Positions 53,371 through 63,650 of a stretch of 64,000 nt of DNA are shown piece by piece (the first letter of the stretch is position 1; each line of letters begins with the position of its first letter). Location of the stretch: IMG/VR virus record IMGVR_UViG_3300050120_000230, positions 186,001 to 250,000 of that record, one strand, 5' to 3'. A program made the position numbers and the translations under genes. The notes below the pieces were generated by a model. That model had not been told where the DNA came from. It saw nothing but the letters and a program-made list of their open reading frames with translations, and did not search any database.

Positions 53371-53564
53371 GCCGAGTATAGGCAAGTATTTGCCTCCACC
53401 TAGACAGTAATTCCATACCGTCGATCTAATTGTTTACAAACAACAAAATCGAATACTGCAATATCAAAGTTCTGGCGTTGTTCTCTACATGTGATATAAT
53501 AGTCATATGCCGTGGGAACACTCCACGTCTTGATCTTTGATAATTGAAAAGGTATGTGCACACC

Positions 53565-53963
53565 ATGGAAAAACAGTCCAAGCACACCAAACTCATCACC
53601 ATGCGCTTGCTCAAGGGGCTTCTTACCTACGAGCAGGCGCGGGACGCTCTGGACAACCCGGAGAAGTTCAAGGCTGAAGAGAAGCGGAAATCTCTTTTGA
53701 AGAATCGCGCAGATGGACAGGCTTGGCCCGGCCGTTATCGCTGGGCCGGTAAAATCCGCACCGCTCGGATGAACGTTGGCTACTGTTGGATGATGAAACG
53801 CAACAAAGCTGGCTATTTTCTGGGCTGGCGAGAGACCTACGACACCAAAGGCGCTTTGATCGAAAGGGATCAATTTGTCGCACGAAAGTCAAAGAAACGC
53901 CTTTCCTTGCTCCAAAAGCGACGGACTGAGGCGCTAAAGAGCAAAAAATCGGTGGCTACTTAA
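53565..53963 (+). CDS. basic hypothetical protein
   Basis: K/R-rich, 132 aa; start uncertain. Confidence 0.6.
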   Translation: MEKQSKHTKLITMRLLKGLLTYEQARDALDNPEKFKAEEKRKSLLKNRADGQAWPGRYRWAGKIRTARMNVGYCWMMKRNKAGYFLGWRETYDTKGALIERDQFVARKSKKRLSLLQKRRTEALKSKKSVAT

Positions 53964-54119
53964 GCGATCAAGGAAAAGCGGCAACGGGGTTAATTTCCTG
54001 TTGTCGCTTTTTCGCGCTTAGGTTGGAGAAATCTCGTTGACGAAACCATTTTTTTCCTATTTGATCCGGTCATGCGCTCAGTAGTGAGCCGCAAGGACCA
54101 ATTCAGGGGATACGCCAAG

Positions 54120-54869
54120 ATGGCGCCAGCTAAGGGTAAAGGTTTCCTCGGAAACCTCGCAGACAAGATCAGCCACGAACTGCTCGAAGATGACGGTTCG
54201 GCTCCCAAGAGCACATCGGCCGCGACTGCCGCTCCGGCTCCCGCGCCTGCACCGGCTCCCACGAGCTATATGCCCGGCGTCTCCGGTCCCGCACCCACGG
54301 TTGCTTCCGGCACCATGCCCTATACCTTTGGGACGGGCGGCGTGACTGGTGCTCCCGAACCGCTGGACCCCAAGGCTCTCGAAGCCGTGCAAGCTGGTGT
54401 GTTCACCAATATCGGCAACCAGCCCTCTCGCTATCTTCTGTTCATGAAGATGTATGAGAACCTCGGCAAGCCCGCCGACCTCACCGTTCCGCTTCATGCC
54501 CTTCAGGTCATGGACCCGTCGCTGACGGCGGCGGCCATCCTGCAAGACATCCAAGCGCACCTGAAGATGCTGGACGATGTCGAGACCAAGGCGGGCACCG
54601 ATCTCGACGGCGCCGCCTCCGATGTTCTGGGCGGGGCCGACAAGCAGATCGCCGATCTGCAAGCCGCCAACGTCAACGCTCAAAGCGAGATCGAGCGTCA
54701 CCAAAAGGAAATGGCCGAACGGATCGGCCAGATCACGCAACTGCAAACGCAACGTGCGAACGACGACGCCAACATCAGCCGCGCCAAGGCTCACACGGCG
54801 GCGGCGGTCAGCGTCGTGCGGTCGCAACTGCAAAGTATGCAGACCACCTTCTCCAACCTCCCCGCCTAA
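54120..54869 (+). CDS. coiled-coil protein, first gene of the ABC locus
   Basis: AGGGG RBS; Pro/Ala linker then long heptad region. Confidence 0.75.
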   Translation: MAPAKGKGFLGNLADKISHELLEDDGSAPKSTSAATAAPAPAPAPAPTSYMPGVSGPAPTVASGTMPYTFGTGGVTGAPEPLDPKALEAVQAGVFTNIGNQPSRYLLFMKMYENLGKPADLTVPLHALQVMDPSLTAAAILQDIQAHLKMLDDVETKAGTDLDGAASDVLGGADKQIADLQAANVNAQSEIERHQKEMAERIGQITQLQTQRANDDANISRAKAHTAAAVSVVRSQLQSMQTTFSNLPA

Positions 54870-54884
54870 ACCGGACCCACACCC

Positions 54885-55904
54885 ATGCCCCAAGAAGCAA
54901 CTACGTGGCATCCGCCACAGGAAAAGATCGTCTCGCGTCTGTTTACGGGCGCTTCGATTTTCGCAGTCGTCGTCGGCGCCTCGTTGGTCATCAAGACCTT
55001 CGTGCCGACCATCAGTGATGCGTTGGCCCTGCTGCAAAAGCTGCTGGCCAATACGATCACCACGGCGATCACGGCGGGCGCCTTGGCGGCCACCCTATGG
55101 GTTCTCTATGAGACCTTCAGCCCCAAGGGCAAGATCAACGGCCTCTTCGCGCAAGCCTATTCGAGCTTCATCCACAACATCACGCTCGAACTGCTGAATG
55201 TCGATCCGATGTCGCCGCTGAAGGACAGCCTCGCCGCCGTCCAGAAGAAGAAGGCGTACTACGACGAGCAGTTCGCCGTGTTCGACGGTCAGATTTCCAA
55301 GCTGAACGAGTCCATCAACACGTTCACGGACAAGGCGAAGAAGTCGGAAAGCCGCGCCAAGGCCGCGCAAACGCAAGGCAACAAGACGGCCTTCGATCAG
55401 GCCGCCTATGAATCCGGCAGCGCCCGCGAAACCGCCGACGATCTCGCCAAGATGGCGGCCCGTCTGATTACGGTTCGCACCGTGATCGTGCGTCTGCAAG
55501 ACGCGGCCAACGATCTGATCTACAAGCTCGGCATCGACATCGAGTCCACGCAGATTCGCTGGGACACGGCCAAGAGCATGAGCGGCATCGAGGGCGCGGC
55601 GCGCAGCATCATCTCTTCCGGCGGCAAGAGCGATCTGGCCAAGGAAGCGCAAGCCATCGTCCAGTCGAAGTATGCCGTCGCCATCGGCCGCCTCGAAAAC
55701 CTGAACGATACGGCGATGCCCCTGCTGAACAGCATGGACATGGACAAGGCGACCTACAGCCAAGAACTCTTGGACAAGTGGGATGCCGAAGATCATTCGC
55801 CCATCGCGATCCCGATGACCGCTACCATTCTGGCCCCCGGCCAGTTGGCGGCGCCCGCTGCTGCTCAGGGTTCCAATTTCCGCGACCTGATCGGCCGTCA
55901 ATAA
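54885..55904 (+). CDS. 2-TM membrane protein with long coiled coil (PspA/IM30-reminiscent)
   Basis: two N-terminal TM helices; about 200-aa helical region. Confidence 0.7.
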   Translation: MPQEATTWHPPQEKIVSRLFTGASIFAVVVGASLVIKTFVPTISDALALLQKLLANTITTAITAGALAATLWVLYETFSPKGKINGLFAQAYSSFIHNITLELLNVDPMSPLKDSLAAVQKKKAYYDEQFAVFDGQISKLNESINTFTDKAKKSESRAKAAQTQGNKTAFDQAAYESGSARETADDLAKMAARLITVRTVIVRLQDAANDLIYKLGIDIESTQIRWDTAKSMSGIEGAARSIISSGGKSDLAKEAQAIVQSKYAVAIGRLENLNDTAMPLLNSMDMDKATYSQELLDKWDAEDHSPIAIPMTATILAPGQLAAPAAAQGSNFRDLIGRQ

Positions 55905-55964
55905 AACTGCGGAACGTTTTCACCCCGACCTACCATCGGAAAAACAAAGAATAGGAGCAGCCAC

Positions 55965-57749
55965 ATGGCTGGTTTGAAGACTCGATATAAAGTTGTCGGC
56001 ATCGGCATCTTGGCTCTGGGAGGCGTCTTCGGTCTGAAGTCTGCCGTTCAACATGGCCTGATCCCGGCTCCGGCCGCTCTCAAGGCGATGATCCCGCAGA
56101 AGGCTGACATCGCGACGCTGGGTGGCAACATCCAGATCGCGCCGACCCAGACCTATGACCTGTCCGCCGCGCCGGAAGCGAACGCGCCCAAGCGCACGTT
56201 CCTGATGATTCCGTGGCAGGGCGGCGGTGCGCTGACGCTCGCCAACGGCGGCGCCGGTGACGCCAGCGGCACGTTGATGCAGAAGTTCGCGGGTTCGAAC
56301 GTGAACCTTCAGCGGCAGGACGACTACGGCAAGATGCAAGAGCAACTGCTGAAGTTCGCCAGCGGCTTCAAGGCCGGTCAAGCGAACCCGGATGGTGCGG
56401 CCTACGTCCAGATCATGGGCGACGGTGGCCCGGCGTTCTTCGCCGGTGTCGAGCCCCAGATGGAGAAGCTCGGCCTTCACCTGAAGATCGTCGGCGTGAC
56501 CGGCTTCTCGCACGGCGAAGACAAGTGCATGGCGCCGGACGTGAACGGTGACCCGAACAAGGCCCGTGGCGACCTGATCGCCGCCGTGCCGCGCGACGGT
56601 GACTGGAACATCTGCGTCAAGTGGGCGTCGGACAACAACATTCCGATCAACACCGACAACACGGTCTACGATCCGACCGCCATCAACTTCGTCGATACGG
56701 ACAGCTTCACGCAAGCCGACGACAAGTTCATCGCGGGCGCCTACGAAGATCGTGACGAAGCCAAGAACGGCATCAAGACGGGCAAGCGCGTCCACGTCCA
56801 GATCAACGGCGTGGCGACGTGGACTCCCGGCGACGTGACCGTCATGGAGAAGAAGGGTGGCGTCGTTTCGCTGGCCTCGACCAAGGACTACGACCAGCAG
56901 ATGCCCGCCGTCATCATCGGCATCAAGGAAGAAATGGACAAGCACCCGGCGTTCGTCACCGGTATGCTTCGGGCCGTTGACCGCGCATCGTTCCAAGTCC
57001 GCACGACTTCGGATGGTGTGCAGAAGATGTCGGAAACTGAAGCCAAGGTGTTCGGCTCGGCGGGCGGCGACGAAGCGAAGCCGGAATACTGGGCACGCTT
57101 CTTCAACGGCTTCGACAGCCCGGACGGCAAGGTGAAGCTCGGTGGGTCGCGCGTTTCGACGCTGGCCGAAATCCGTGACTTCATGGGCATGGGCACCGGC
57201 ACCCTGAACGTCTACCAAGGCGTCTGGAACGTGTTCGGCGACTACGACAAGACCTTCTACCCGAAGCTGGTCCCCAGCTATCCGAAGTTCGCTGACGTGG
57301 TCGATACGAGCTACATCAAGGCCGCCCTCAACGGCGTCCAGATGACGGCTCCGACTTCGACGGCGTTCTCCACCCAGAAGACGATGTCGGCGACCGTGTC
57401 CAAGAAGGCCGTCTCCATCGAGTTCGACAACGGTAAGGCGACGATCCGCCCGACCAGCCGCGCTCAACTGGTGGACATCGCCAACCAGTCCGGCATGACC
57501 AGCCTGCTGATCCGCATCGAAGGTCACACGGACAACACCGGCAACCCGGATGCGAACGTCGCCCTGTCGCGGGCTCGCGCTCAAGCGGTGGCTACGGCGC
57601 TGACGAACATGGCCCCGGCCACGTTCCCGGCGACCCGTATGGAAGTGCGTGGCTACGGCGACACGAAGCCGGTCAACGATACGGCCGACCAGAACTCGCC
57701 GACCGAGCGCGCGAAGAACCGCCGCGTCGAGGTGATCCTCGGCAACTAA
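55965..57749 (+). CDS. ABC transporter substrate-binding protein (NitT/TauT-like) fused to a C-terminal OmpA-like peptidoglycan-binding domain
   Basis: N-terminal membrane anchor; IEFDNGK, EGHTDNTG, LSRARAQAV, GYG and NRRVEV OmpA motifs. Confidence 0.85.
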   Translation: MAGLKTRYKVVGIGILALGGVFGLKSAVQHGLIPAPAALKAMIPQKADIATLGGNIQIAPTQTYDLSAAPEANAPKRTFLMIPWQGGGALTLANGGAGDASGTLMQKFAGSNVNLQRQDDYGKMQEQLLKFASGFKAGQANPDGAAYVQIMGDGGPAFFAGVEPQMEKLGLHLKIVGVTGFSHGEDKCMAPDVNGDPNKARGDLIAAVPRDGDWNICVKWASDNNIPINTDNTVYDPTAINFVDTDSFTQADDKFIAGAYEDRDEAKNGIKTGKRVHVQINGVATWTPGDVTVMEKKGGVVSLASTKDYDQQMPAVIIGIKEEMDKHPAFVTGMLRAVDRASFQVRTTSDGVQKMSETEAKVFGSAGGDEAKPEYWARFFNGFDSPDGKVKLGGSRVSTLAEIRDFMGMGTGTLNVYQGVWNVFGDYDKTFYPKLVPSYPKFADVVDTSYIKAALNGVQMTAPTSTAFSTQKTMSATVSKKAVSIEFDNGKATIRPTSRAQLVDIANQSGMTSLLIRIEGHTDNTGNPDANVALSRARAQAVATALTNMAPATFPATRMEVRGYGDTKPVNDTADQNSPTERAKNRRVEVILGN

Positions 57750-57757
57750 GACGGCTT

Positions 57758-57790
57758 GGGGTGGGCTTCGGCCCACCCCTTTCCTCTTTC
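57758..57790 (+). terminator. intrinsic terminator between the binding protein and permease genes
   Basis: GGGGTGGGC-TTCG-GCCCACCCC followed by TTTCCTCTTT. Confidence 0.8.
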
Positions 57791-57815
57791 TCAGTAAGAT
57801 TTTCGGAGACCCGTC

Positions 57816-58625
57816 ATGGGCGTCCAATCCCTCCTGCTGCCTAACGAGAAGGTCAACGAGCGCGTTTCGCTGATCCTGACAGGCGGTTGGGTTTTGTTCA
57901 TTCTCGCCTTCTGGTGGGGTGTCCTGCCGCACGCTTCTGCGCTGATCCCCACCCCGCCCGAAGTGGCGAAGGCTGGGTTGATCCAATGGAACCAAGGCGC
58001 GGTCATCGTTGCCGACTCCAACGGTATTCATGCTGGCCAACTCATCATCAGCATTTTCACCAGCCTATCGGCGATCTTTTTCGCTCTTCTGTTGGGCCTA
58101 TCACTGGCCTATCTCTCGACGATCCCGTTGTTCAAAGCGCCGGTGCGCTTCATTGGGAGTGCGAGGGTTCTCAGCCTTACAGGCATGACCTTCATTTTCG
58201 TTCTGGCTACGCCCAATGGCTACTGGCTCAAGGTGTCGGTTCTGATCTTTGCCATCGTGGTTTTCTTCATCAACGCCATGCTTCAAGTGATCGAAGACAT
58301 TCCACAAGGTCGGTTCGACCATGCTCGAACCCTTGGAATGAATCACTGGGAAGTTCTTCGTGAAGTGGTCATCCGGGGAACACTTGCTTCCGCGTTTGAT
58401 ACGCTGCGGATGAATGCCGCCATGGCGTGGATGATGCTGACCATGGTCGAAAGCATGTCGCGTTCCGGCGGTGGGATTGGCATCGTGCTGGTCGAGCTTG
58501 CTCGGACGGCCAACTATGCCGCAATCTTCAGCGTTCAGTTGATGATTTTCGTCGTCGGTATCGCCCAAGACAAACTCGTGCAGTTCGCCAAATTGGCAGC
58601 CTGCCCTTACACGAAGGGTCAATAG
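57816..58625 (+). CDS. ABC transporter permease (SsuC/TauC-like)
   Basis: about six TM helices; EAA-like loop DHARTLGMNHWEVLREVV. Confidence 0.88.
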   Translation: MGVQSLLLPNEKVNERVSLILTGGWVLFILAFWWGVLPHASALIPTPPEVAKAGLIQWNQGAVIVADSNGIHAGQLIISIFTSLSAIFFALLLGLSLAYLSTIPLFKAPVRFIGSARVLSLTGMTFIFVLATPNGYWLKVSVLIFAIVVFFINAMLQVIEDIPQGRFDHARTLGMNHWEVLREVVIRGTLASAFDTLRMNAAMAWMMLTMVESMSRSGGGIGIVLVELARTANYAAIFSVQLMIFVVGIAQDKLVQFAKLAACPYTKGQ

Positions 58626-59510
58626 ATGAGCGGCGTCGTGGGTTACGAATACGAACTCAAAGACACGCTCTTGGACGTGCGCGACGTGAGCATGGTCTAT
58701 GGAGACAATGTCGTCCTGCGTGATGTGAGTTTCCAGATCAAAGATATCGTCCGGCCGGGTAAAACACAGGGTCAGGTCAATGCTTTGCTGGCGCCCTCCG
58801 GCACGGGGAAAACTCAGCTATTTCGATGTATCGCTGGGCTCCAAGTTCCGACCAACGGTGAAGTTTTCTTGAACCGCCATGATTGCACCGCTGATGGCAA
58901 AGCCGTCGTGGATGACAAGGGCCAGCCAATTTTGAAGCCGGTGACAGTTGGGTCAGTCGGCGTGGTTGCACAGGACTATCCGCTGTTCAATCACCTGTCC
59001 GTCTGGGACAATCTGATGATGGCGGCCGAAATCAAGATGAACAAGGCCGCCGCCACAGAAAAAGTCGAAGCGTTGCTTCAACGTTTCGGTCTCTCCGAAC
59101 GACGCACGTTCTATCCGCAGGCGCTTTCTGGCGGCCAGCGGCAACGCGTGGCGATCATCCAGCAAATGGTCTGCAATGGTAAATTGCTGCTGATGGATGA
59201 ACCATTCTCCGGTCTCGATATCATCATGAAGGAAGAGGTGCAGAACCTCATCTCCGACGTGGCCGCGTCCGACGAGTGGAATTCTGTCATCGTCACGACC
59301 CATGACATCCAAAGCGCCATCGCCGTGGCCGACACGATTCTTCTGTTGGGCAAAGAACGCAAGCCCAACGGTGAGATCGTCCCCGGCGCCTACATCAAGC
59401 ACACCTACAATTTGATGGACCTTGGGCTGACTTGGCACCCGGATATCGCTTCTCTTCCGGCATTTGCCGAACTTGAACGCGAAATCAAGGCGCGGTTTAG
59501 GGAACTGTGA
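58626..59510 (+). CDS. ABC transporter ATP-binding protein (SsuB/TauB-like)
   Basis: APSGTGKT, Q-loop VAQD, LSGGQRQR, LLMDEPFSGLD and TTHD. Confidence 0.93.
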   Translation: MSGVVGYEYELKDTLLDVRDVSMVYGDNVVLRDVSFQIKDIVRPGKTQGQVNALLAPSGTGKTQLFRCIAGLQVPTNGEVFLNRHDCTADGKAVVDDKGQPILKPVTVGSVGVVAQDYPLFNHLSVWDNLMMAAEIKMNKAAATEKVEALLQRFGLSERRTFYPQALSGGQRQRVAIIQQMVCNGKLLLMDEPFSGLDIIMKEEVQNLISDVAASDEWNSVIVTTHDIQSAIAVADTILLLGKERKPNGEIVPGAYIKHTYNLMDLGLTWHPDIASLPAFAELEREIKARFREL

Positions 59511-59758
59511 TGGATTACGAAACGGTCGTTCGAGCGAGTTTGGCCGGGACGCTCATTCTCGTCACCATAACGTTGGCCATCATGTTCGCAGATTGGTGGC
59601 GGCGGGGCCGCAGTAGTCATTGGGTTACGGTGGCTCAAATCGACGGCATCGTCTATCAACAACACAAAACGCGCCCCGAATGGCGGCGATGGTATCCGAC
59701 TTTCAGTGGATACCGGGTGCGGATCGACTGGATCAAGGGCAGAACCGACAAGCTCTAA
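59507..59758 (+). CDS. small membrane protein
   Basis: one N-terminal TM helix; GTGA overlap. Confidence 0.55.
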   Translation: MMDYETVVRASLAGTLILVTITLAIMFADWWRRGRSSHWVTVAQIDGIVYQQHKTRPEWRRWYPTFSGYRVRIDWIKGRTDKL

Positions 59759-59827
59759 TCCATTTTCGTTGACGAAATTATAATCTGGGGGCATGATGCT
59801 TGTAACAAAACAAGCACGAGGCACCCC

Positions 59828-60646: not shown

Positions 60647-62236
60647 ATGGACATTCTAGAGCAACTTTTGAGTCAGGCATTCGCCGCCGAAGGTTTGGAC
60701 CCCGCACTTGCTGTGGTGTCGCCTTCGGAGCGGCCGGACCTTGCCGATTTTCAATCGAACGGAGTGTTTCTAGCGGCCAAGGCTGCGCGGATAAATCCTC
60801 GGGCTCTGGCCGAGCGGATCGTTGAACGGCTCAAACACCCAGACATCACGTTCGAAGTAGCCGGGCCGGGCTATATCAACATGACGCTGGGTCCGGCTCT
60901 GCTCGAAAAGATGCTGCTGGACAACAGTCCGATCCCACAGGTTTCCGGTCGGATCGTGTTGGATTTCGGTGGACCGAATGTCGCCAAGCCGATGCATGTG
61001 GGTCATATGCGGTCTCTGGTGATCGGTGACGCCCTTCAACGGATTTTGCGGTTCGTGGGCTACGAGGTGCTGTCCGACATCCACCTCGGCGACTGGGGCC
61101 TCCAAATGGGCCTGTTGCTGGCGGCCTTGGAAGGCACACCGCTACATGACTACAATATCGCGCTGTTGGAAAAAACCTATCCACAGGCGGCGGCTCTTGC
61201 CAAAGAGGATGAACCCTTCCGGTTGAAGGCACAGATGTTCACGCGCCTACTGCAACAAGGTGATCCCGAGCTTATGCAGCGGTGGCGGAAAATGGTCTGC
61301 GTGAGCATGACCACCGTCAATCGGGAGCTTGCTGCTCTGAAAGTCAATTTCACTCTCATGAAGGGTGAAAGTGACGTTCAGGACTTGATCCCCGATATGA
61401 TCGCGAGCTTCGTCGCCAAAGGGATCGTAGAGGAAGACAACGGGGCGCTCGTCGTCCGGGTTGGAGAACCTCCACTCATCCTGCGGAAGTCGGATGGTGC
61501 GGCTCTCTATTCCACGACCGATCTCGCGACGATCCTTGATCGGAAGGCAGCCTTCGATCCCGACAAGATCATCTATGTGACCGATGAACGGCAGCAACTT
61601 CACTTCAAGCAGGTTTTCGCGGCGGCCGAGATGGCTGGTTATCTGAACGGCAAGCTCGAACTCGAACACATCTGGTTCGGGACGGTGAACGACGCCAATG
61701 GCAAGCCACTCAAGACGCGGGCTGGTGGTGTGCCGAAGTTGCACGACCTGATCGAAGAAGCGATCACCAAGGCGTCCGAGAAGAATGCTGAATCGGCGAT
61801 CCCGGTGGCTATGGCGGCGTTGAAGTTCGCCGATCTACAAAACCCTCGGACAGGGTCGTATTCTTTCGATCTCGATAAGTTCCTGAGCTTCGAAGGCAAG
61901 ACCGGCCCATATCTGCTCTATCAAGCGGTGCGGATCAAATCCATCCTCGTCAAGTCGGTTGAACCCGGCCCGATTACGCTTGAGACCGCACAGGAGCGGG
62001 CTCTTGCGTTCAAGCTGGTGTTCGGTTTCCGGCAGGCGCTCGATGGCGCCGTGCGGCGATTGTCGCCCAAAGAGATCGCCGATCACGCCTACGATCTCGC
62101 GCAATCCTTCTCGAAGTATTATGCGAACACGCAGATCGGAGAATCACCGTCGAGGGTGGCCCTCTCTGCCAAGGTGTTGGCCCAACTGGAATGCTGCTTG
62201 GGTCTGATGGGTATCGATATCCCCGAGCGGATGTGA
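60647..62236 (+). CDS. argS: arginyl-tRNA synthetase
   Basis: N-terminal add-on domain (ADFQSN, VAGPGYIN), PNVAKPMHVGHMRS HIGH motif, GDWGLQMG, KSDG..LY.TTDLA, EGKTGPYLLY and DALR-type anticodon domain. Confidence 0.95.
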   Translation: MDILEQLLSQAFAAEGLDPALAVVSPSERPDLADFQSNGVFLAAKAARINPRALAERIVERLKHPDITFEVAGPGYINMTLGPALLEKMLLDNSPIPQVSGRIVLDFGGPNVAKPMHVGHMRSLVIGDALQRILRFVGYEVLSDIHLGDWGLQMGLLLAALEGTPLHDYNIALLEKTYPQAAALAKEDEPFRLKAQMFTRLLQQGDPELMQRWRKMVCVSMTTVNRELAALKVNFTLMKGESDVQDLIPDMIASFVAKGIVEEDNGALVVRVGEPPLILRKSDGAALYSTTDLATILDRKAAFDPDKIIYVTDERQQLHFKQVFAAAEMAGYLNGKLELEHIWFGTVNDANGKPLKTRAGGVPKLHDLIEEAITKASEKNAESAIPVAMAALKFADLQNPRTGSYSFDLDKFLSFEGKTGPYLLYQAVRIKSILVKSVEPGPITLETAQERALAFKLVFGFRQALDGAVRRLSPKEIADHAYDLAQSFSKYYANTQIGESPSRVALSAKVLAQLECCLGLMGIDIPERM

Positions 62237-62513: not shown

Positions 62514-63650
62514 ATGCGTGAGTTCATCAATCTCCTAGAGCAAGCCGACAACGTCACGCTCTATCGCGGCGACAGCGGCCCTGTGGAGAAGTTCGAACTG
62601 GCCAAGACCGATTCAGGAGCTTTGCTCGGCATCGGCATCTATCTCACCGATAGCCCGGAAGTGGCTGGCGACTATACCGTCAAGGGTTCCCAAGACATCG
62701 CCTATCCGTCAGGGCGCCGGGGCGAAGACAATTCGTTCAACGATCCGAAGCAATTGACCGCTGGGTATCTGCGGAAACTCATGAACGATGCTGGTTTCCA
62801 ACAGCAAATGGACGACACGAAAAATCAGTGGCAGGACAAATATTACAGCCTGTCGCGAGATATCGATTGGACCGACCATGAACGTGCTCGTAAGGAGCGC
62901 GACGAAATGCAAGCCAAGTTCCAAGCGGACTATCAGGTCGTCCGATCCAAGATGATCCGCGCCGCCGTGGCCAAGGCCAAGGCACAGTTCAAGGCGATTC
63001 GACCGAACCTACGGATGGTCAAGCTGACCACTGGGGAATACATCTTCACGAAAGTTGGCCGGGCGGCCAGCATCGCGAAGTTTATCGTGCCTACGGCCTA
63101 CCTCGAACGATGCCTTCATGCTGAGCGGCCTCTGCCTGATGATCTTCTTCCGATCATGAAAGCGGCTTTCGCTCGTGTGGCTCATGACAAAAACCCCGAT
63201 CAAAAATGGGACCTACGGGTTCGGAATCCCAAGGGGAACAACGGCGACGAAGACATTGGCCTTTCATTCGATGAGTTCATCGCAGGCTTTCGTAAAGCGG
63301 GCGCTCGCTACGCGTGGACGGACGAAGTTCGTGGCGGCAAGGGTGAGAACCCTTCGCTCGACATCCTCTGGAACGGCACGCACAGCGGCTATCACGTCTT
63401 CCAGAACAAAGAAGCACAAGAGACCCTCATGCATGAACTCATGGCCATGGGCTACGTCGGCTACGCCTACGACGGCGGCGTTCGTCTAGCTGGCACCGGT
63501 GCTCGTGGTGGCGGTGGCATTCGTCACAACGCCTACGTTCTTTGGGACGAAAATGCCGTTCATTCTTTCCGCGTCGAGGGCGGCGGGGTGACTGATGACG
63601 AAGTCGGTGACTTGGAAAAAGGTATCAAGGCAGCAAAAGTCCTGCGTTAA
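62514..63650 (+). CDS. ADP-ribosyltransferase-like (polyvalent-protein ART type) late protein
   Basis: TLYRGD, GIGIYLTD..EVAGDY; starts MREFINLLE; TAAATA 4 nt upstream. Confidence 0.6.
   Translation: MREFINLLEQADNVTLYRGDSGPVEKFELAKTDSGALLGIGIYLTDSPEVAGDYTVKGSQDIAYPSGRRGEDNSFNDPKQLTAGYLRKLMNDAGFQQQMDDTKNQWQDKYYSLSRDIDWTDHERARKERDEMQAKFQADYQVVRSKMIRAAVAKAKAQFKAIRPNLRMVKLTTGEYIFTKVGRAASIAKFIVPTAYLERCLHAERPLPDDLLPIMKAAFARVAHDKNPDQKWDLRVRNPKGNNGDEDIGLSFDEFIAGFRKAGARYAWTDEVRGGKGENPSLDILWNGTHSGYHVFQNKEAQETLMHELMAMGYVGYAYDGGVRLAGTGARGGGGIRHNAYVLWDENAVHSFRVEGGGVTDDEVGDLEKGIKAAKVLR

What the first reader, a model, noticed from the sequence alone, without database searches (positions are those of the whole stretch)
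54120..59510. Complete phage-encoded ABC importer with an OmpA-fused binding protein
Seen: binding protein, permease and ATPase are all intact. The binding protein has an N-terminal membrane anchor and a C-terminal OmpA-like peptidoglycan-binding domain, so it could span from inner membrane to cell wall. A UUCG terminator after it predicts a large excess of binding protein over permease and ATPase. Established: SsuABC/TauABC-family architecture; OmpA_C binds peptidoglycan. Inference: a whole transporter is unusual phage cargo; it may scavenge nucleosides or cofactors (it lies downstream of nrdAB) or act in envelope remodelling or exclusion.
Basis: partly seen in the sequence, partly recalled or inferred. 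Interest (0 to 1): 0.75.

Follow-up and report, generated by a model that had tools for sequence, protein, structure and literature searches.

The report
Phage five-gene envelope and ABC-importer module
A 415-kb peat phage carries an intact ABC importer whose binding protein is fused to a cell-wall anchor, but it is one copy of a five-gene envelope module found in dozens of huge phages and many soil and water bacteria, so it is recurrent cargo of unknown substrate rather than a one-off.

Summary
On the + strand lie a 594-aa export-signal/SBP/OmpA_C protein (55965-57749), a 9-bp UUCG hairpin (57758-57779), a type-I permease (57816-58625) and an intact ABC ATPase (58626-59510). An AlphaFold model places residues ~60-455 in the TauA/SsuA/NrtA/CmpA fold. 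No Pfam, NCBIfam or PHROG model matched that part.

The interpretation needs widening. One is a cytoplasmic coiled-coil protein (54120-54869). The other is a membrane-anchored helical-hairpin protein (54885-55904) that looks most like PspA/Vipp1. The order A-B-S-P-T recurs in 47 of 61 IMG/VR contigs with a full-length S, many of them 200-578 kb. It also recurs in Burkholderiales and some Bacteroidota. Linkage to nrdAB is seen in only 2 of the 61.

A strong hairpin right after the binding-protein gene is a family-wide feature. The locus is not a chimera.

Both published themes already exist: bacterial operons with a PBP+OmpA protein, an ABC transporter, PspA and a membrane-bound Snf7 (Ravi 2024), and huge-phage PspA genes beside complete ABC transporters (Yuan & Chen 2026). 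Substrate, expression and role in infection remain untested. My best guess is solute import coupled to inner-membrane maintenance.

The parts
53976..54012 (+). Terminator-like hairpin plus T-run that closes the upstream gene (53544-53963). It marks the 5' boundary of the unit.
   Evidence: Read directly from the sequence (GCGGCAAC...GTTGTCGC then TTTTT). The consensus scan did not list it.
54037..54071 (+). Promoter-like site: TTGACGAAA (-35-like), 17 nt, then TTTGAT. It is one copy of a motif class that recurs across the phage genome.
   Evidence: TTGACGAAA occurs 24 times in the 415-kb genome against about 2 expected, mostly behind an AT-rich stretch. Window copies are listed. Promoter function is inferred, not shown.
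54120..54869 (+). Gene A: cytoplasmic protein of 249 aa from ATG 54120 (the longest ORF starts at 54072). It has a short conserved N-terminal amphipathic motif, a Pro/Ala-rich linker, a helical domain and a C-terminal coiled coil. No known family.
   Evidence: ORF. Homologues start at the position of 54120, and AGGGGA lies 10 nt upstream. An HMM seeded from phage and bacterial copies converges on 45 loci. Only generic coiled-coil hits in Pfam. hhalign against PspA is not significant. No hydrophobic segment.
54885..55904 (+). Gene B: 339-aa membrane-anchored helical protein. A hydrophobic N-terminal hairpin (about residues 16-78) is followed by a three-helix coiled-coil domain (about 105-290) that resembles PspA/Vipp1 (ESCRT-III) or BAR domains.
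   Evidence: Model pLDDT 76.6. Vipp1/PspA/LiaH are the top hits in Foldseek PDB (E 2e-3, 19-20% identity), in AFDB Swiss-Prot and in the ESM Atlas shape search. VIA-align ranks BAR domains first (Z 10-11.6) and Vipp1/PspA at 9.5-9.7, all below the level that is meaningful for helical bundles. Weak PspA_IM30 and Snf7 HMM hits. hhalign against PspA is not significant. Homologous to the bacterial neighbour gene (E 1e-7).
55965..57749 (+). Gene S: 594-aa exported protein. It has an N-terminal hydrophobic anchor or signal (6-29), a disordered linker (30-75), a NitT/TauT-type substrate-binding domain (about 76-455) and an OmpA-like peptidoglycan-binding domain (487-585).
   Evidence: The family has 353 clusters at 50% identity, nearly all about 600 aa, so the fusion is the rule. 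The OmpA motif GHTDNTG...LSRARA has D523 and R538 invariant.
57758..57789 (+). Hairpin with a 9-bp G+C stem and UUCG loop, followed by the interrupted U-tract UUUCCUCUUU. Probably a leaky terminator or 3'-end stabiliser that uncouples S from P and T.
   Evidence: A strong hairpin at this position is family-wide. Its effect on transcript levels is inferred.
57816..58625 (+). Gene P: 269-aa type-I ABC importer permease with an ARTLG (EAA-loop) motif. GGAGA lies 7 nt before the ATG.
   Evidence: BPD_transp_1. SaoP/NtrB/SsuC/TauC are the best NCBIfam models. Hydrophobic segments and the motif. Sequence.
58626..59510 (+). Gene T: 294-aa ABC ATPase with all catalytic motifs. Its start codon directly follows the stop of P.
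59510..59758 (+). Small ORF (82 aa, one hydrophobic segment) whose ATG overlaps the stop of T. It is not conserved in related modules, so its membership is doubtful.
   Evidence: Sequence. Small ORFs at the same place in L094, L095 and L004 do not align with it.
59769..59797 (+). Next copy of the TTGACGAAA promoter-like motif, which marks the 3' boundary of the unit.

Best explanation
The locus is one transcription unit of five conserved genes, A-B-S-P-T.

Shown: S, P and T form a complete binding-protein-dependent type-I ABC importer of the nitrate/sulfonate/taurine (NitT/TauT) kind. The binding protein S is exported. It stays attached at one end by its N-terminal hydrophobic segment and at the other end by an OmpA-like domain with the conserved peptidoglycan-binding Asp and Arg.

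Inferred: S therefore sits fixed between inner membrane and cell wall above its permease rather than diffusing freely.

Inferred: the G+C hairpin with a broken U-tract after S lets only part of the transcripts run on into P and T. This gives more binding protein than channel, as in many binding-protein operons.

Shown as conserved neighbours, with function inferred: A and B act on the cytoplasmic face. B is anchored by a hydrophobic hairpin and carries a long helical-hairpin domain of PspA/Vipp1 (ESCRT-III) or BAR appearance. A is a soluble coiled-coil partner.

Most likely role: the module couples uptake of one small, still unknown solute with stabilisation or shaping of the inner membrane. 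The huge phage expresses it from its own promoter to keep the host envelope working during a long infection.

The conserved aromatic and acidic residues of the S domain (W84, E185, D186, D211, D213, W286, D290, Y309) suggest a cationic or amine ligand. That is a weak inference, because the pocket was not mapped on the model.
For: Parts and folds.

The five-gene order is conserved in 36 of 88 genomic and metagenomic loci, and S-P-T is present in nearly all of them. In IMG/VR, 47 of 61 viral contigs with a full-length S show the five-gene order. Further huge-phage contigs of 206-578 kb carry it too. No other gene is widely co-conserved.

S is under strong constraint: 29 invariant positions in the binding domain across phage and bacterial copies.

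A hairpin after S is family-wide.

A, B and S have higher GC3 (0.73-0.85) than P and T (0.68-0.69). The other GC-richest regions of the genome are virion structural genes.

The promoter-like motif brackets the unit.

B resembles PspA/Vipp1.

Literature: Ravi et al. 2024 (PMC11237479) describe bacterial operons joining PspA, a membrane-anchored divergent Snf7, a PBPB+OmpA solute-binding protein, a permease and an ABC ATPase, and propose a link between membrane remodelling and transport. Yuan & Chen 2026 (10.64898/2026.10.24.761521) report 15 huge-phage PspA genes beside complete ABC transporters.

Some bacterial loci have OmpR-type regulators or sensor kinases next door (L007).
Against: - No substrate, transport or expression data exist. 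No RNA run holds this DNA.
- The PspA/ESCRT-III assignment of B is not established. Pfam PspA_IM30 finds nothing in the phage genome at E <= 1. hhalign against PspA gives a probability of 1.6%. An independent aligner ranks BAR domains first, with all Z values in the range seen for unrelated helical bundles.
- A has no recognisable family.
- About half of the bacterial loci, mostly Bacteroidota, have S-P-T without A-B next to it. The importer can therefore work, or at least persist, without adjacent A-B.
- The published bacterial operon has a different gene order and an AAA+ ATPase that is absent here.
- The hairpin's U-tract is interrupted, so it may stabilise the mRNA rather than terminate it.
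Confidence: 0.5

Rival explanations
1. This is a plain auxiliary metabolic importer, as the reader first suggested. S-P-T scavenges a nutrient such as nucleosides, cofactors, or a sulfur, nitrogen or phosphorus compound to feed phage replication. A and B are unrelated neighbours.
For: The importer is intact and strongly conserved. It sits in a replication and nucleotide region with helicases, NrdAB and ArgRS. Many Bacteroidota carry S-P-T alone. PHROGs files phage ABC ATPases under auxiliary metabolic genes.
Against: NrdB is within 5 kb in only 2 of 61 viral loci, whereas A-B precede S in at least 50. A freely diffusing binding protein would serve scavenging better than one tied to the wall. 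The fold family (TauA, SsuA, NrtA, CmpA, ThiY/Thi5) is not the nucleoside-binding kind.
Confidence: 0.25
2. This is not a transporter in practice but an ATP-driven envelope device. The ABC ATPase and permease pass conformational changes to the wall-bound S protein and to the A/B coiled coils. The purpose would be to remodel the envelope, exclude superinfecting phages or time lysis, with the binding domain acting as a sensor.
For: S is tethered at both ends like MotB, PomB, TssL or YiaD. Its partners look like membrane-shaping proteins. The module is more diverse in phages than in the bacterial clades.
Against: The permease is the ordinary type-I importer fold with the EAA-loop motif, not the MacB/FtsX/LolC kind used by known mechanotransmitting ABC systems. 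The binding domain keeps many invariant polar and aromatic residues, as expected for a real ligand site.
Confidence: 0.15
3. This is host DNA joined to the phage contig by misassembly, or a very recent host pick-up with no role for the phage.
For: The A-B-S part is richer in G+C (0.60-0.63) than the genome mean of 0.554; the module as a whole is at z 2.8. Close bacterial operons exist.
Against: Logan's separate assembly of the peat run (probably the source sample) spans the whole stretch in one 14.9-kb contig at even depth. A second peat sample holds two identical 151-base pieces. P and T have the genome's average G+C, and the phage's own tail-fibre genes are as G+C-rich as A-B-S. The genome's recurrent promoter-like motif flanks the unit. 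The window's S protein falls in a starred all-viral/metagenomic clade at 57-79% identity. The best bacterial matches (genome collection, excluding contigs binned as candidate-phyla bacteria) reach only 37-44%. A 578-kb phage contig has the same NrdB ... module ... ArgRS order.
Confidence: 0.03

Closest known systems
NitT/TauT-family ABC importers (SsuABC, TauABC, NrtABCD/CmpABCD; TC 3.A.1.16-17, named from my own knowledge)
   Same: The binding-domain fold matches (Foldseek top hits TauA 6ssy, NrtA 2g29, CmpA 2i4b, SsuA 3ksx/2x26). The permease's best NCBIfam models are SaoP, NtrB, SsuC and TauC. The ATPase is canonical. The gene order is binding protein, permease, ATPase.
   Different: Sequence identity to any solved binding protein is only 9-14%. 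No Pfam, NCBIfam or PHROG model hits the domain. The binding protein carries a C-terminal OmpA-like wall anchor and about 100 extra residues. All NCBIfam scores are far below the family cut-offs. The substrate is unknown.
Bacterial PspA / membrane-anchored Snf7 operons with a PBPB+OmpA solute-binding protein, permease and ABC ATPase (Ravi et al. 2024, PMC11237479; example OGG56892.1)
   Same: Same set of component types: an exported binding protein with an OmpA domain, a permease, an ABC ATPase, a membrane-anchored divergent ESCRT-III-like protein and a second coiled-coil protein. The authors make the same proposal that remodelling and transport are linked.
   Different: The published order is PspA, S, P, T, TM-Snf7, AAA+. 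Here it is A, B, S, P, T with no AAA+ ATPase. A is not recognisably PspA. I could not compare sequences with OGG56892.1, so membership in the same family is untested. This copy is phage-borne.
Huge-phage PspA neighbourhoods with complete ABC transporters (Yuan & Chen 2026 preprint, 10.64898/2026.10.24.761521)
   Same: Huge phages, a PspA-like gene, and an adjacent binding protein, permease and ATPase. The interpretation as envelope or membrane-stress cargo is also the same.
   Different: The preprint gives 15 cases without describing an OmpA fusion, a five-gene order or bacterial counterparts. Its supplementary tables were not available here, so I cannot say whether this module is among them. 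Pfam's PspA model does not hit this phage.
Wall-tethered inner-membrane proteins with OmpA-like domains (MotB/PomB, TssL, YiaD, YfiB, Pal)
   Same: The C-terminal domain matches them at E 1e-13 to 1e-21 and keeps the TD...R peptidoglycan-binding motif. The N-terminal hydrophobic segment plus linker is arranged as in MotB.
   Different: None of these has a substrate-binding domain between anchor and OmpA domain, and none is the receptor of an ABC importer.

Membership tests
Binding-protein-dependent type-I ABC importer | ABC ATPase with Walker A, Q-loop, LSGGQ signature, Walker B and H-loop | tested here: met
   ABC_tran E 5e-25. All motifs located.
Binding-protein-dependent type-I ABC importer | Permease of the BPD_transp_1 fold with an EAA-loop | tested here: met
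   BPD_transp_1 at 27.8 bits against a cut-off of 26.4. ARTLG motif at residue 170 and multiple hydrophobic segments. The margin is narrow.
Binding-protein-dependent type-I ABC importer | Exported two-lobe substrate-binding protein encoded with the permease | tested here: met
   Model pLDDT 86.9. Foldseek to TauA/NrtA/CmpA/SsuA with TM by target 0.60-0.74. N-terminal export segment.
Binding-protein-dependent type-I ABC importer | ATP-dependent uptake of a defined ligand | not testable with these tools
   This needs a binding screen and an uptake assay.
NitT/TauT subfamily (SsuABC/TauABC/NrtABC) | Sequence membership in curated subfamily models | tested here: not met
   The best NCBIfam permease hits score 35 bits (SaoP) against a cut-off of 295, and 18 bits (SsuC) against 347. 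No model hits the binding domain. It works like this subfamily and is its nearest relative, but it is a separate, unnamed family.
OmpA-like peptidoglycan-binding domain (PF00691) | Pfam match over the gathering score, with the conserved Asp and Arg of the diaminopimelate-binding site | tested here: met
   65.1 bits against 27.2. D523 and R538 are invariant in 59 sequences. Mapping these to the ligand contacts of the Acinetobacter OmpA structure (3td5) rests on my own knowledge. Binding itself was not tested.
PspA/IM30/Vipp1 (ESCRT-III superfamily), for gene B | Significant sequence or profile match to PspA_IM30 or Snf7 | tested here: not met
   No PF04012 hit in the genome at E <= 1. 2 of 43 family members hit weakly, best E 0.002, below the cut-off. 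hhalign probability 1.6%.
PspA/IM30/Vipp1 (ESCRT-III superfamily), for gene B | Helical-hairpin fold (helices 1-3) that superposes on PspA/Vipp1 better than on other coiled coils | tested here: inconclusive
   Vipp1/PspA rank first in Foldseek PDB, AFDB Swiss-Prot and the Atlas shape search. VIA-align ranks BAR domains first, and all Z values are below 13.
PspA/IM30/Vipp1 (ESCRT-III superfamily), for gene B | Self-assembly into rings or rods on membranes | not testable with these tools
   This needs purified protein and electron microscopy.
Intrinsic terminator | G+C-rich stem-loop directly followed by a U-run | tested here: inconclusive
   9-bp stem with 8 G-C pairs and a UUCG loop. The tail UUUCCUCUUU is interrupted. 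The position is conserved across the family. Termination efficiency was not measured.

The most novel reading that the evidence does not exclude
The A-B-S-P-T unit may be at heart a phage invention rather than borrowed host metabolism. On this reading it is a wall-anchored, ATP-driven membrane-shaping machine that huge phages use to reorganise the host inner membrane, for example to keep it sealed or to build a membrane-associated replication or assembly site. The tight Burkholderiales and Bacteroidota clades would then be domesticated descendants. The greater depth and diversity of the viral branches in the S tree, and the near-universal five-gene order in viral contigs compared with about half of the bacterial loci, are compatible with this but do not show it. 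The tree is unrooted and phage genes evolve faster.
Probability: 0.1. Interest if true: 0.8.

Novelty: new member of a known kind. Interest (0 to 1): 0.45.

Why it matters
Huge phages carry many genes that act on the host envelope, and almost none have been tested. This module is a well-defined candidate for such a test. It has five genes and is strongly conserved in dozens of huge phages and in cultivable bacteria such as Undibacterium, Massilia, Collimonas, Caballeronia, Emticicia and Fibrella. Its function could therefore be worked out in a tractable host and then carried over to the phage.

It would also give a first handle on two open questions. One is why an ABC importer's receptor should be bolted to the cell wall. 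The other is whether bacterial ESCRT-III-like proteins really work together with transporters, as comparative genomics has proposed.

For annotation, the binding domain deserves its own family model. At present these proteins are labelled 'OmpA-OmpF porin', which they are not.

Tried and rejected
- Structure-based complex test of A with B: no verdict. It counts neither for nor against binding.
- Profile-profile comparison of B and of A with four genuine PspA proteins taken from genomes that also carry the module: not significant.
- A against B: unrelated.
- PADLOC: only generic MotB/ZorB hits on the OmpA domain and generic ABC hits. There is no sign of a known defence system.
- Megablast of the locus against GenBank phages: no match.
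- Profile search of S against PDB sequences: finds only the OmpA domain. The binding fold was detectable only by structure.
- RNA evidence. No metatranscriptome holds this DNA. The scraps laid from two soil/rhizosphere RNA runs are 40-50-base matches to the conserved ATPase motifs of other organisms, so they say nothing about expression.
- Search for a sixth conserved gene. The small ORF overlapping the stop of T is not conserved. Clustering of flanking ORFs found only lineage-restricted neighbours: an OmpR-type regulator in 14 loci, sensor kinases, and a second free NMT1-type binding protein in four contigs binned as candidate-phyla bacteria.
- Foreign origin inferred from G+C: rejected.
- Ligand identity. 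I could not read model coordinates, so the pocket was not mapped. The 'cationic ligand' idea rests only on which residues are invariant.

Full report
**Where the window lies**

The window is bases 186001-250000 of a 415,409-bp IMG/VR virus record, estimated 72% complete.
- The record encodes a large terminase and tail-fibre and virion proteins.
- The window itself holds helicases, a DnaB-like protein, NrdA, NrdB and an arginyl-tRNA synthetase among many ORFs without family hits.
- The DNA comes from a peat metagenome.

**Checking the observation**

Five same-strand ORFs fill 54072-59510.

S (55965-57749, 594 aa):
- One hydrophobic segment near the N-terminus.
- An OmpA family domain at residues 487-585 (E 7.8e-18), also matched by many solved OmpA-like domains.
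- No Pfam, NCBIfam, PHROG or PDB-sequence hit covers residues 30-480.
- I collected homologues, aligned 59 of them (A1) and predicted the structure (mean pLDDT 86.9, pTM 0.83).
- Foldseek places residues about 60-455 in the fold of TauA, NrtA, CmpA, SsuA and Thi5/ThiY-type proteins. Against the PDB, E is 3e-10 to 1e-8 and TM by target 0.60-0.74. Against Swiss-Prot models, E is 4.5e-12 to 1e-9.

P (57816-58625):
- A BPD_transp_1 permease, narrowly over the cut-off.
- Its nearest curated models are SaoP, NtrB, SsuC and TauC.

T (58626-59510):
- An ABC ATPase with every catalytic motif.

The hairpin:
- GGGGTGGGC-UUCG-GCCCACCCC plus UUUCCUCUUU lies at 57758-57789.
- The intergenic RNA folds at -29.8 kcal/mol, z -3.1.

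**What else belongs to it**

A (249 aa from that start):
- No hydrophobic segment.
- A conserved short N-terminal amphipathic motif, a Pro/Ala-rich linker and a C-terminal coiled coil.
- It matches only generic coiled-coil models.

B (54885-55904, 339 aa):
- A hydrophobic N-terminal region followed by long helices.

Both families are found next to S elsewhere:
- HMMs seeded with the phage proteins and with the two genes upstream of a Bacteroidota S homologue converge on the same sets.
- Among 88 loci from genomes and metagenomes, 36 show A-B-S-P-T in that exact order and 32 show S-P-T alone.
- Among 61 IMG/VR viral contigs with a full-length S, 47 show the full five-gene order. Most of the rest are cut by contig ends.
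- Individual huge-phage contigs of 206, 570 and 578 kb show it amid typical phage ORFs.
- By contrast, NrdB lies within 5 kb in only 2 viral loci.
- No sixth gene is broadly conserved.

**Is it really phage DNA?**

Yes.
- Logan's separate assembly of the peat run spans the stretch in one 14.9-kb contig at even depth. The run is probably the sample the window came from, so this is a second assembly, not a second data set. A second peat sample holds two identical 151-base pieces.
- The unit is preceded by a terminator-like hairpin and by a copy of TTGACGAAA. This motif occurs 24 times in the genome against about 2 expected, behind AT-rich DNA and ahead of -10-like hexamers. The next copy follows the unit.
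- A, B and S are G+C-richer than the genome mean. P and T are not, and the other G+C-richest regions are the phage's own tail-fibre genes.
- In a tree of S proteins, the window's copy lies in a well-supported clade made only of viral and unlabelled metagenomic sequences, at 57-79% identity. Named bacterial copies (excluding contigs binned as candidate-phyla bacteria) reach 37-44%.
- With IMG/VR sequences added, viral branches are the deepest and most diverse. Burkholderiales (26 rows) and Bacteroidota (43 rows) form two compact clades. About six virus/bacterium label changes are needed.
- The tree is unrooted, so the direction of transfer is open.

**What B is**

Evidence for a PspA/Vipp1 (ESCRT-III) likeness:
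- A language-model feature search gave PspA/IM30 as a lead only.
- Foldseek put Vipp1, PspA and LiaH first in the PDB and in Swiss-Prot models, at 19-20% identity.
- The Atlas shape search put a PspA/IM30 cluster first.

Evidence against calling it a member:
- VIA-align, which does not use sequence, ranked BAR domains first (Z 10-11.6) and Vipp1/PspA at 9.5-9.7. All of these are in the range that long helical bundles reach by arrangement alone.
- Pfam's PspA model finds nothing in the genome.
- Two of 43 family members hit it weakly.
- hhalign against real PspA proteins is not significant.

I therefore describe B as a membrane-anchored helical-hairpin protein that resembles ESCRT-III (PspA/Vipp1) or BAR proteins, and I do not file it as a member. 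Both look-alike classes shape or stabilise membranes. The C-terminal domain should be cytoplasmic if the N-terminal region forms a two-helix hairpin; this is inferred from the sequence.

**The hairpin is a family trait**

I scored the most stable local hairpin in the 85 nt after each gene across the loci. Median free energies were:
- after S: -19.5 kcal/mol
- after A: -9.5
- after B: -10.2
- after P: -10.6
- after T: -14.7
- inside S: -13.2

The paired Wilcoxon p value is about 1e-8 for S against B, P or inside S. The loci are related, so these p values overstate independence. The stems differ in sequence while keeping their place, and several carry clean U-runs. P has its own GGAGA and T abuts P's stop, so both depend on read-through. 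The higher GC3 of A, B and S fits higher expression, but that is only suggestive.

**How it probably works**

S, P and T make a complete importer of the NitT/TauT kind.
- S is exported and keeps the peptidoglycan-binding Asp and Arg of OmpA-like domains; D523 and R538 are invariant.
- The N-terminal segment has 18-20 hydrophobic residues, no lipobox and no clear AXA site, and is followed by a conserved motif. This suggests an uncleaved anchor. S would then bridge membrane and wall as MotB does, with a 45-residue flexible linker.
- The binding domain has 29 invariant positions across phages and bacteria. Many are aromatic or acidic (W84, E185, D186, D211, D213, W286, D290, Y309). That argues for one conserved ligand and hints at a cation or amine. 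The pocket was not mapped.
- On the cytoplasmic side sit the ATPase, A and the helical domain of B.

My preferred reading is import of a small solute coupled to maintenance or shaping of the inner membrane, expressed by the phage to keep the host envelope functional. It rests on conserved gene linkage, fold resemblance and two published comparative studies, not on any experiment.

**Comparison with the literature**

- Ravi et al. 2024 (PMC11237479) list an operon PspA, SIG+PBPB+OmpA, permease, ABC ATPase, SIG+TM+Snf7, AAA+. They suggest that the OmpA domain binds the wall while the binding domain captures the solute.
- Yuan & Chen 2026 (preprint 10.64898/2026.10.24.761521) find 189 PspA genes in huge phages, 15 of them beside complete ABC transporters.
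- The present module has the same kinds of parts. It differs in gene order, lacks an AAA+ ATPase, and has an A protein that is not recognisably PspA.
- I could not test whether it is the same family as either set.

**Verdict**

- The finding is real, and it is larger than described: five genes rather than three.
- It is neither a chimera nor a rarity among huge phages.
- The nucleoside-scavenging idea is not supported. The envelope idea fits better but is unproven.
- I rate it a new member of a kind already noted in the literature, of moderate interest. Its main value is as a tractable target for experiments.

Noticed in passing
window 54037, 59769, 46748 (- strand), 28552; 24 sites across the genome G000:C1: The motif [CG]GTTGACGAAA, usually behind an AT-rich stretch and 16-18 nt ahead of a -10-like hexamer, occurs 24 times in the 415-kb genome against about 2 expected. 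It is probably a class of phage promoters read by the host sigma-70 polymerase.
   Followed up: partly
L002 (contig JBINOA010003469.1 of GCA_043956695.1, 1,136,180 bp): A 1.1-Mb contig carries the same five-gene module among small ORFs almost all without Pfam hits, which is phage-like content. It is either an exceptionally large phage genome, a concatemer or misassembly, or a phage region inside something else.
   Followed up: no
L008, L009, L011, L021, L022, L064: Contigs binned as Parcubacteria, Lloydbacteria, Paceibacterota or Patescibacteria carry the module, and their S proteins branch with viral sequences. Four of them have an extra free NMT1_3-type binding protein just upstream of A. 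They are probably phage contigs mis-binned into candidate-phyla genomes.
   Followed up: partly
window 54120-59510: GC3 splits at the hairpin: A 0.73, B 0.81 and S 0.85, against P 0.69 and T 0.68. The genome's other G+C-richest stretches (C1:16-26 kb and 85-94 kb) encode tail-fibre and virion proteins.
   Followed up: partly
L095 8803-9729; L103, L107, L111, L134, L146 and others: In many viral copies of the module, 0.3-1.7 kb of extra DNA with small ORFs is inserted between S and P or between P and T. The bacterial copies are mostly compact.
   Followed up: no
window 60647-62236 and 62514-63650: There is a complete phage-encoded arginyl-tRNA synthetase. Next to it is a 378-aa protein with a weak, sub-threshold match to ADP-ribosyltransferases of polyvalent proteins (ART-PolyVal, E 0.002).
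   Followed up: no
S-protein tree: Viral S proteins form several deep branches. The Burkholderiales and Bacteroidota copies form two compact clades, one of them nested among viral sequences. Direction of transfer cannot be read from the unrooted tree.
   Followed up: partly
public annotation of S homologues: JGI names most members of this roughly 600-aa family 'OOP family OmpA-OmpF porin'. The model shows no beta-barrel porin, only a binding domain plus an OmpA-like domain, so the name is misleading.
   Followed up: yes
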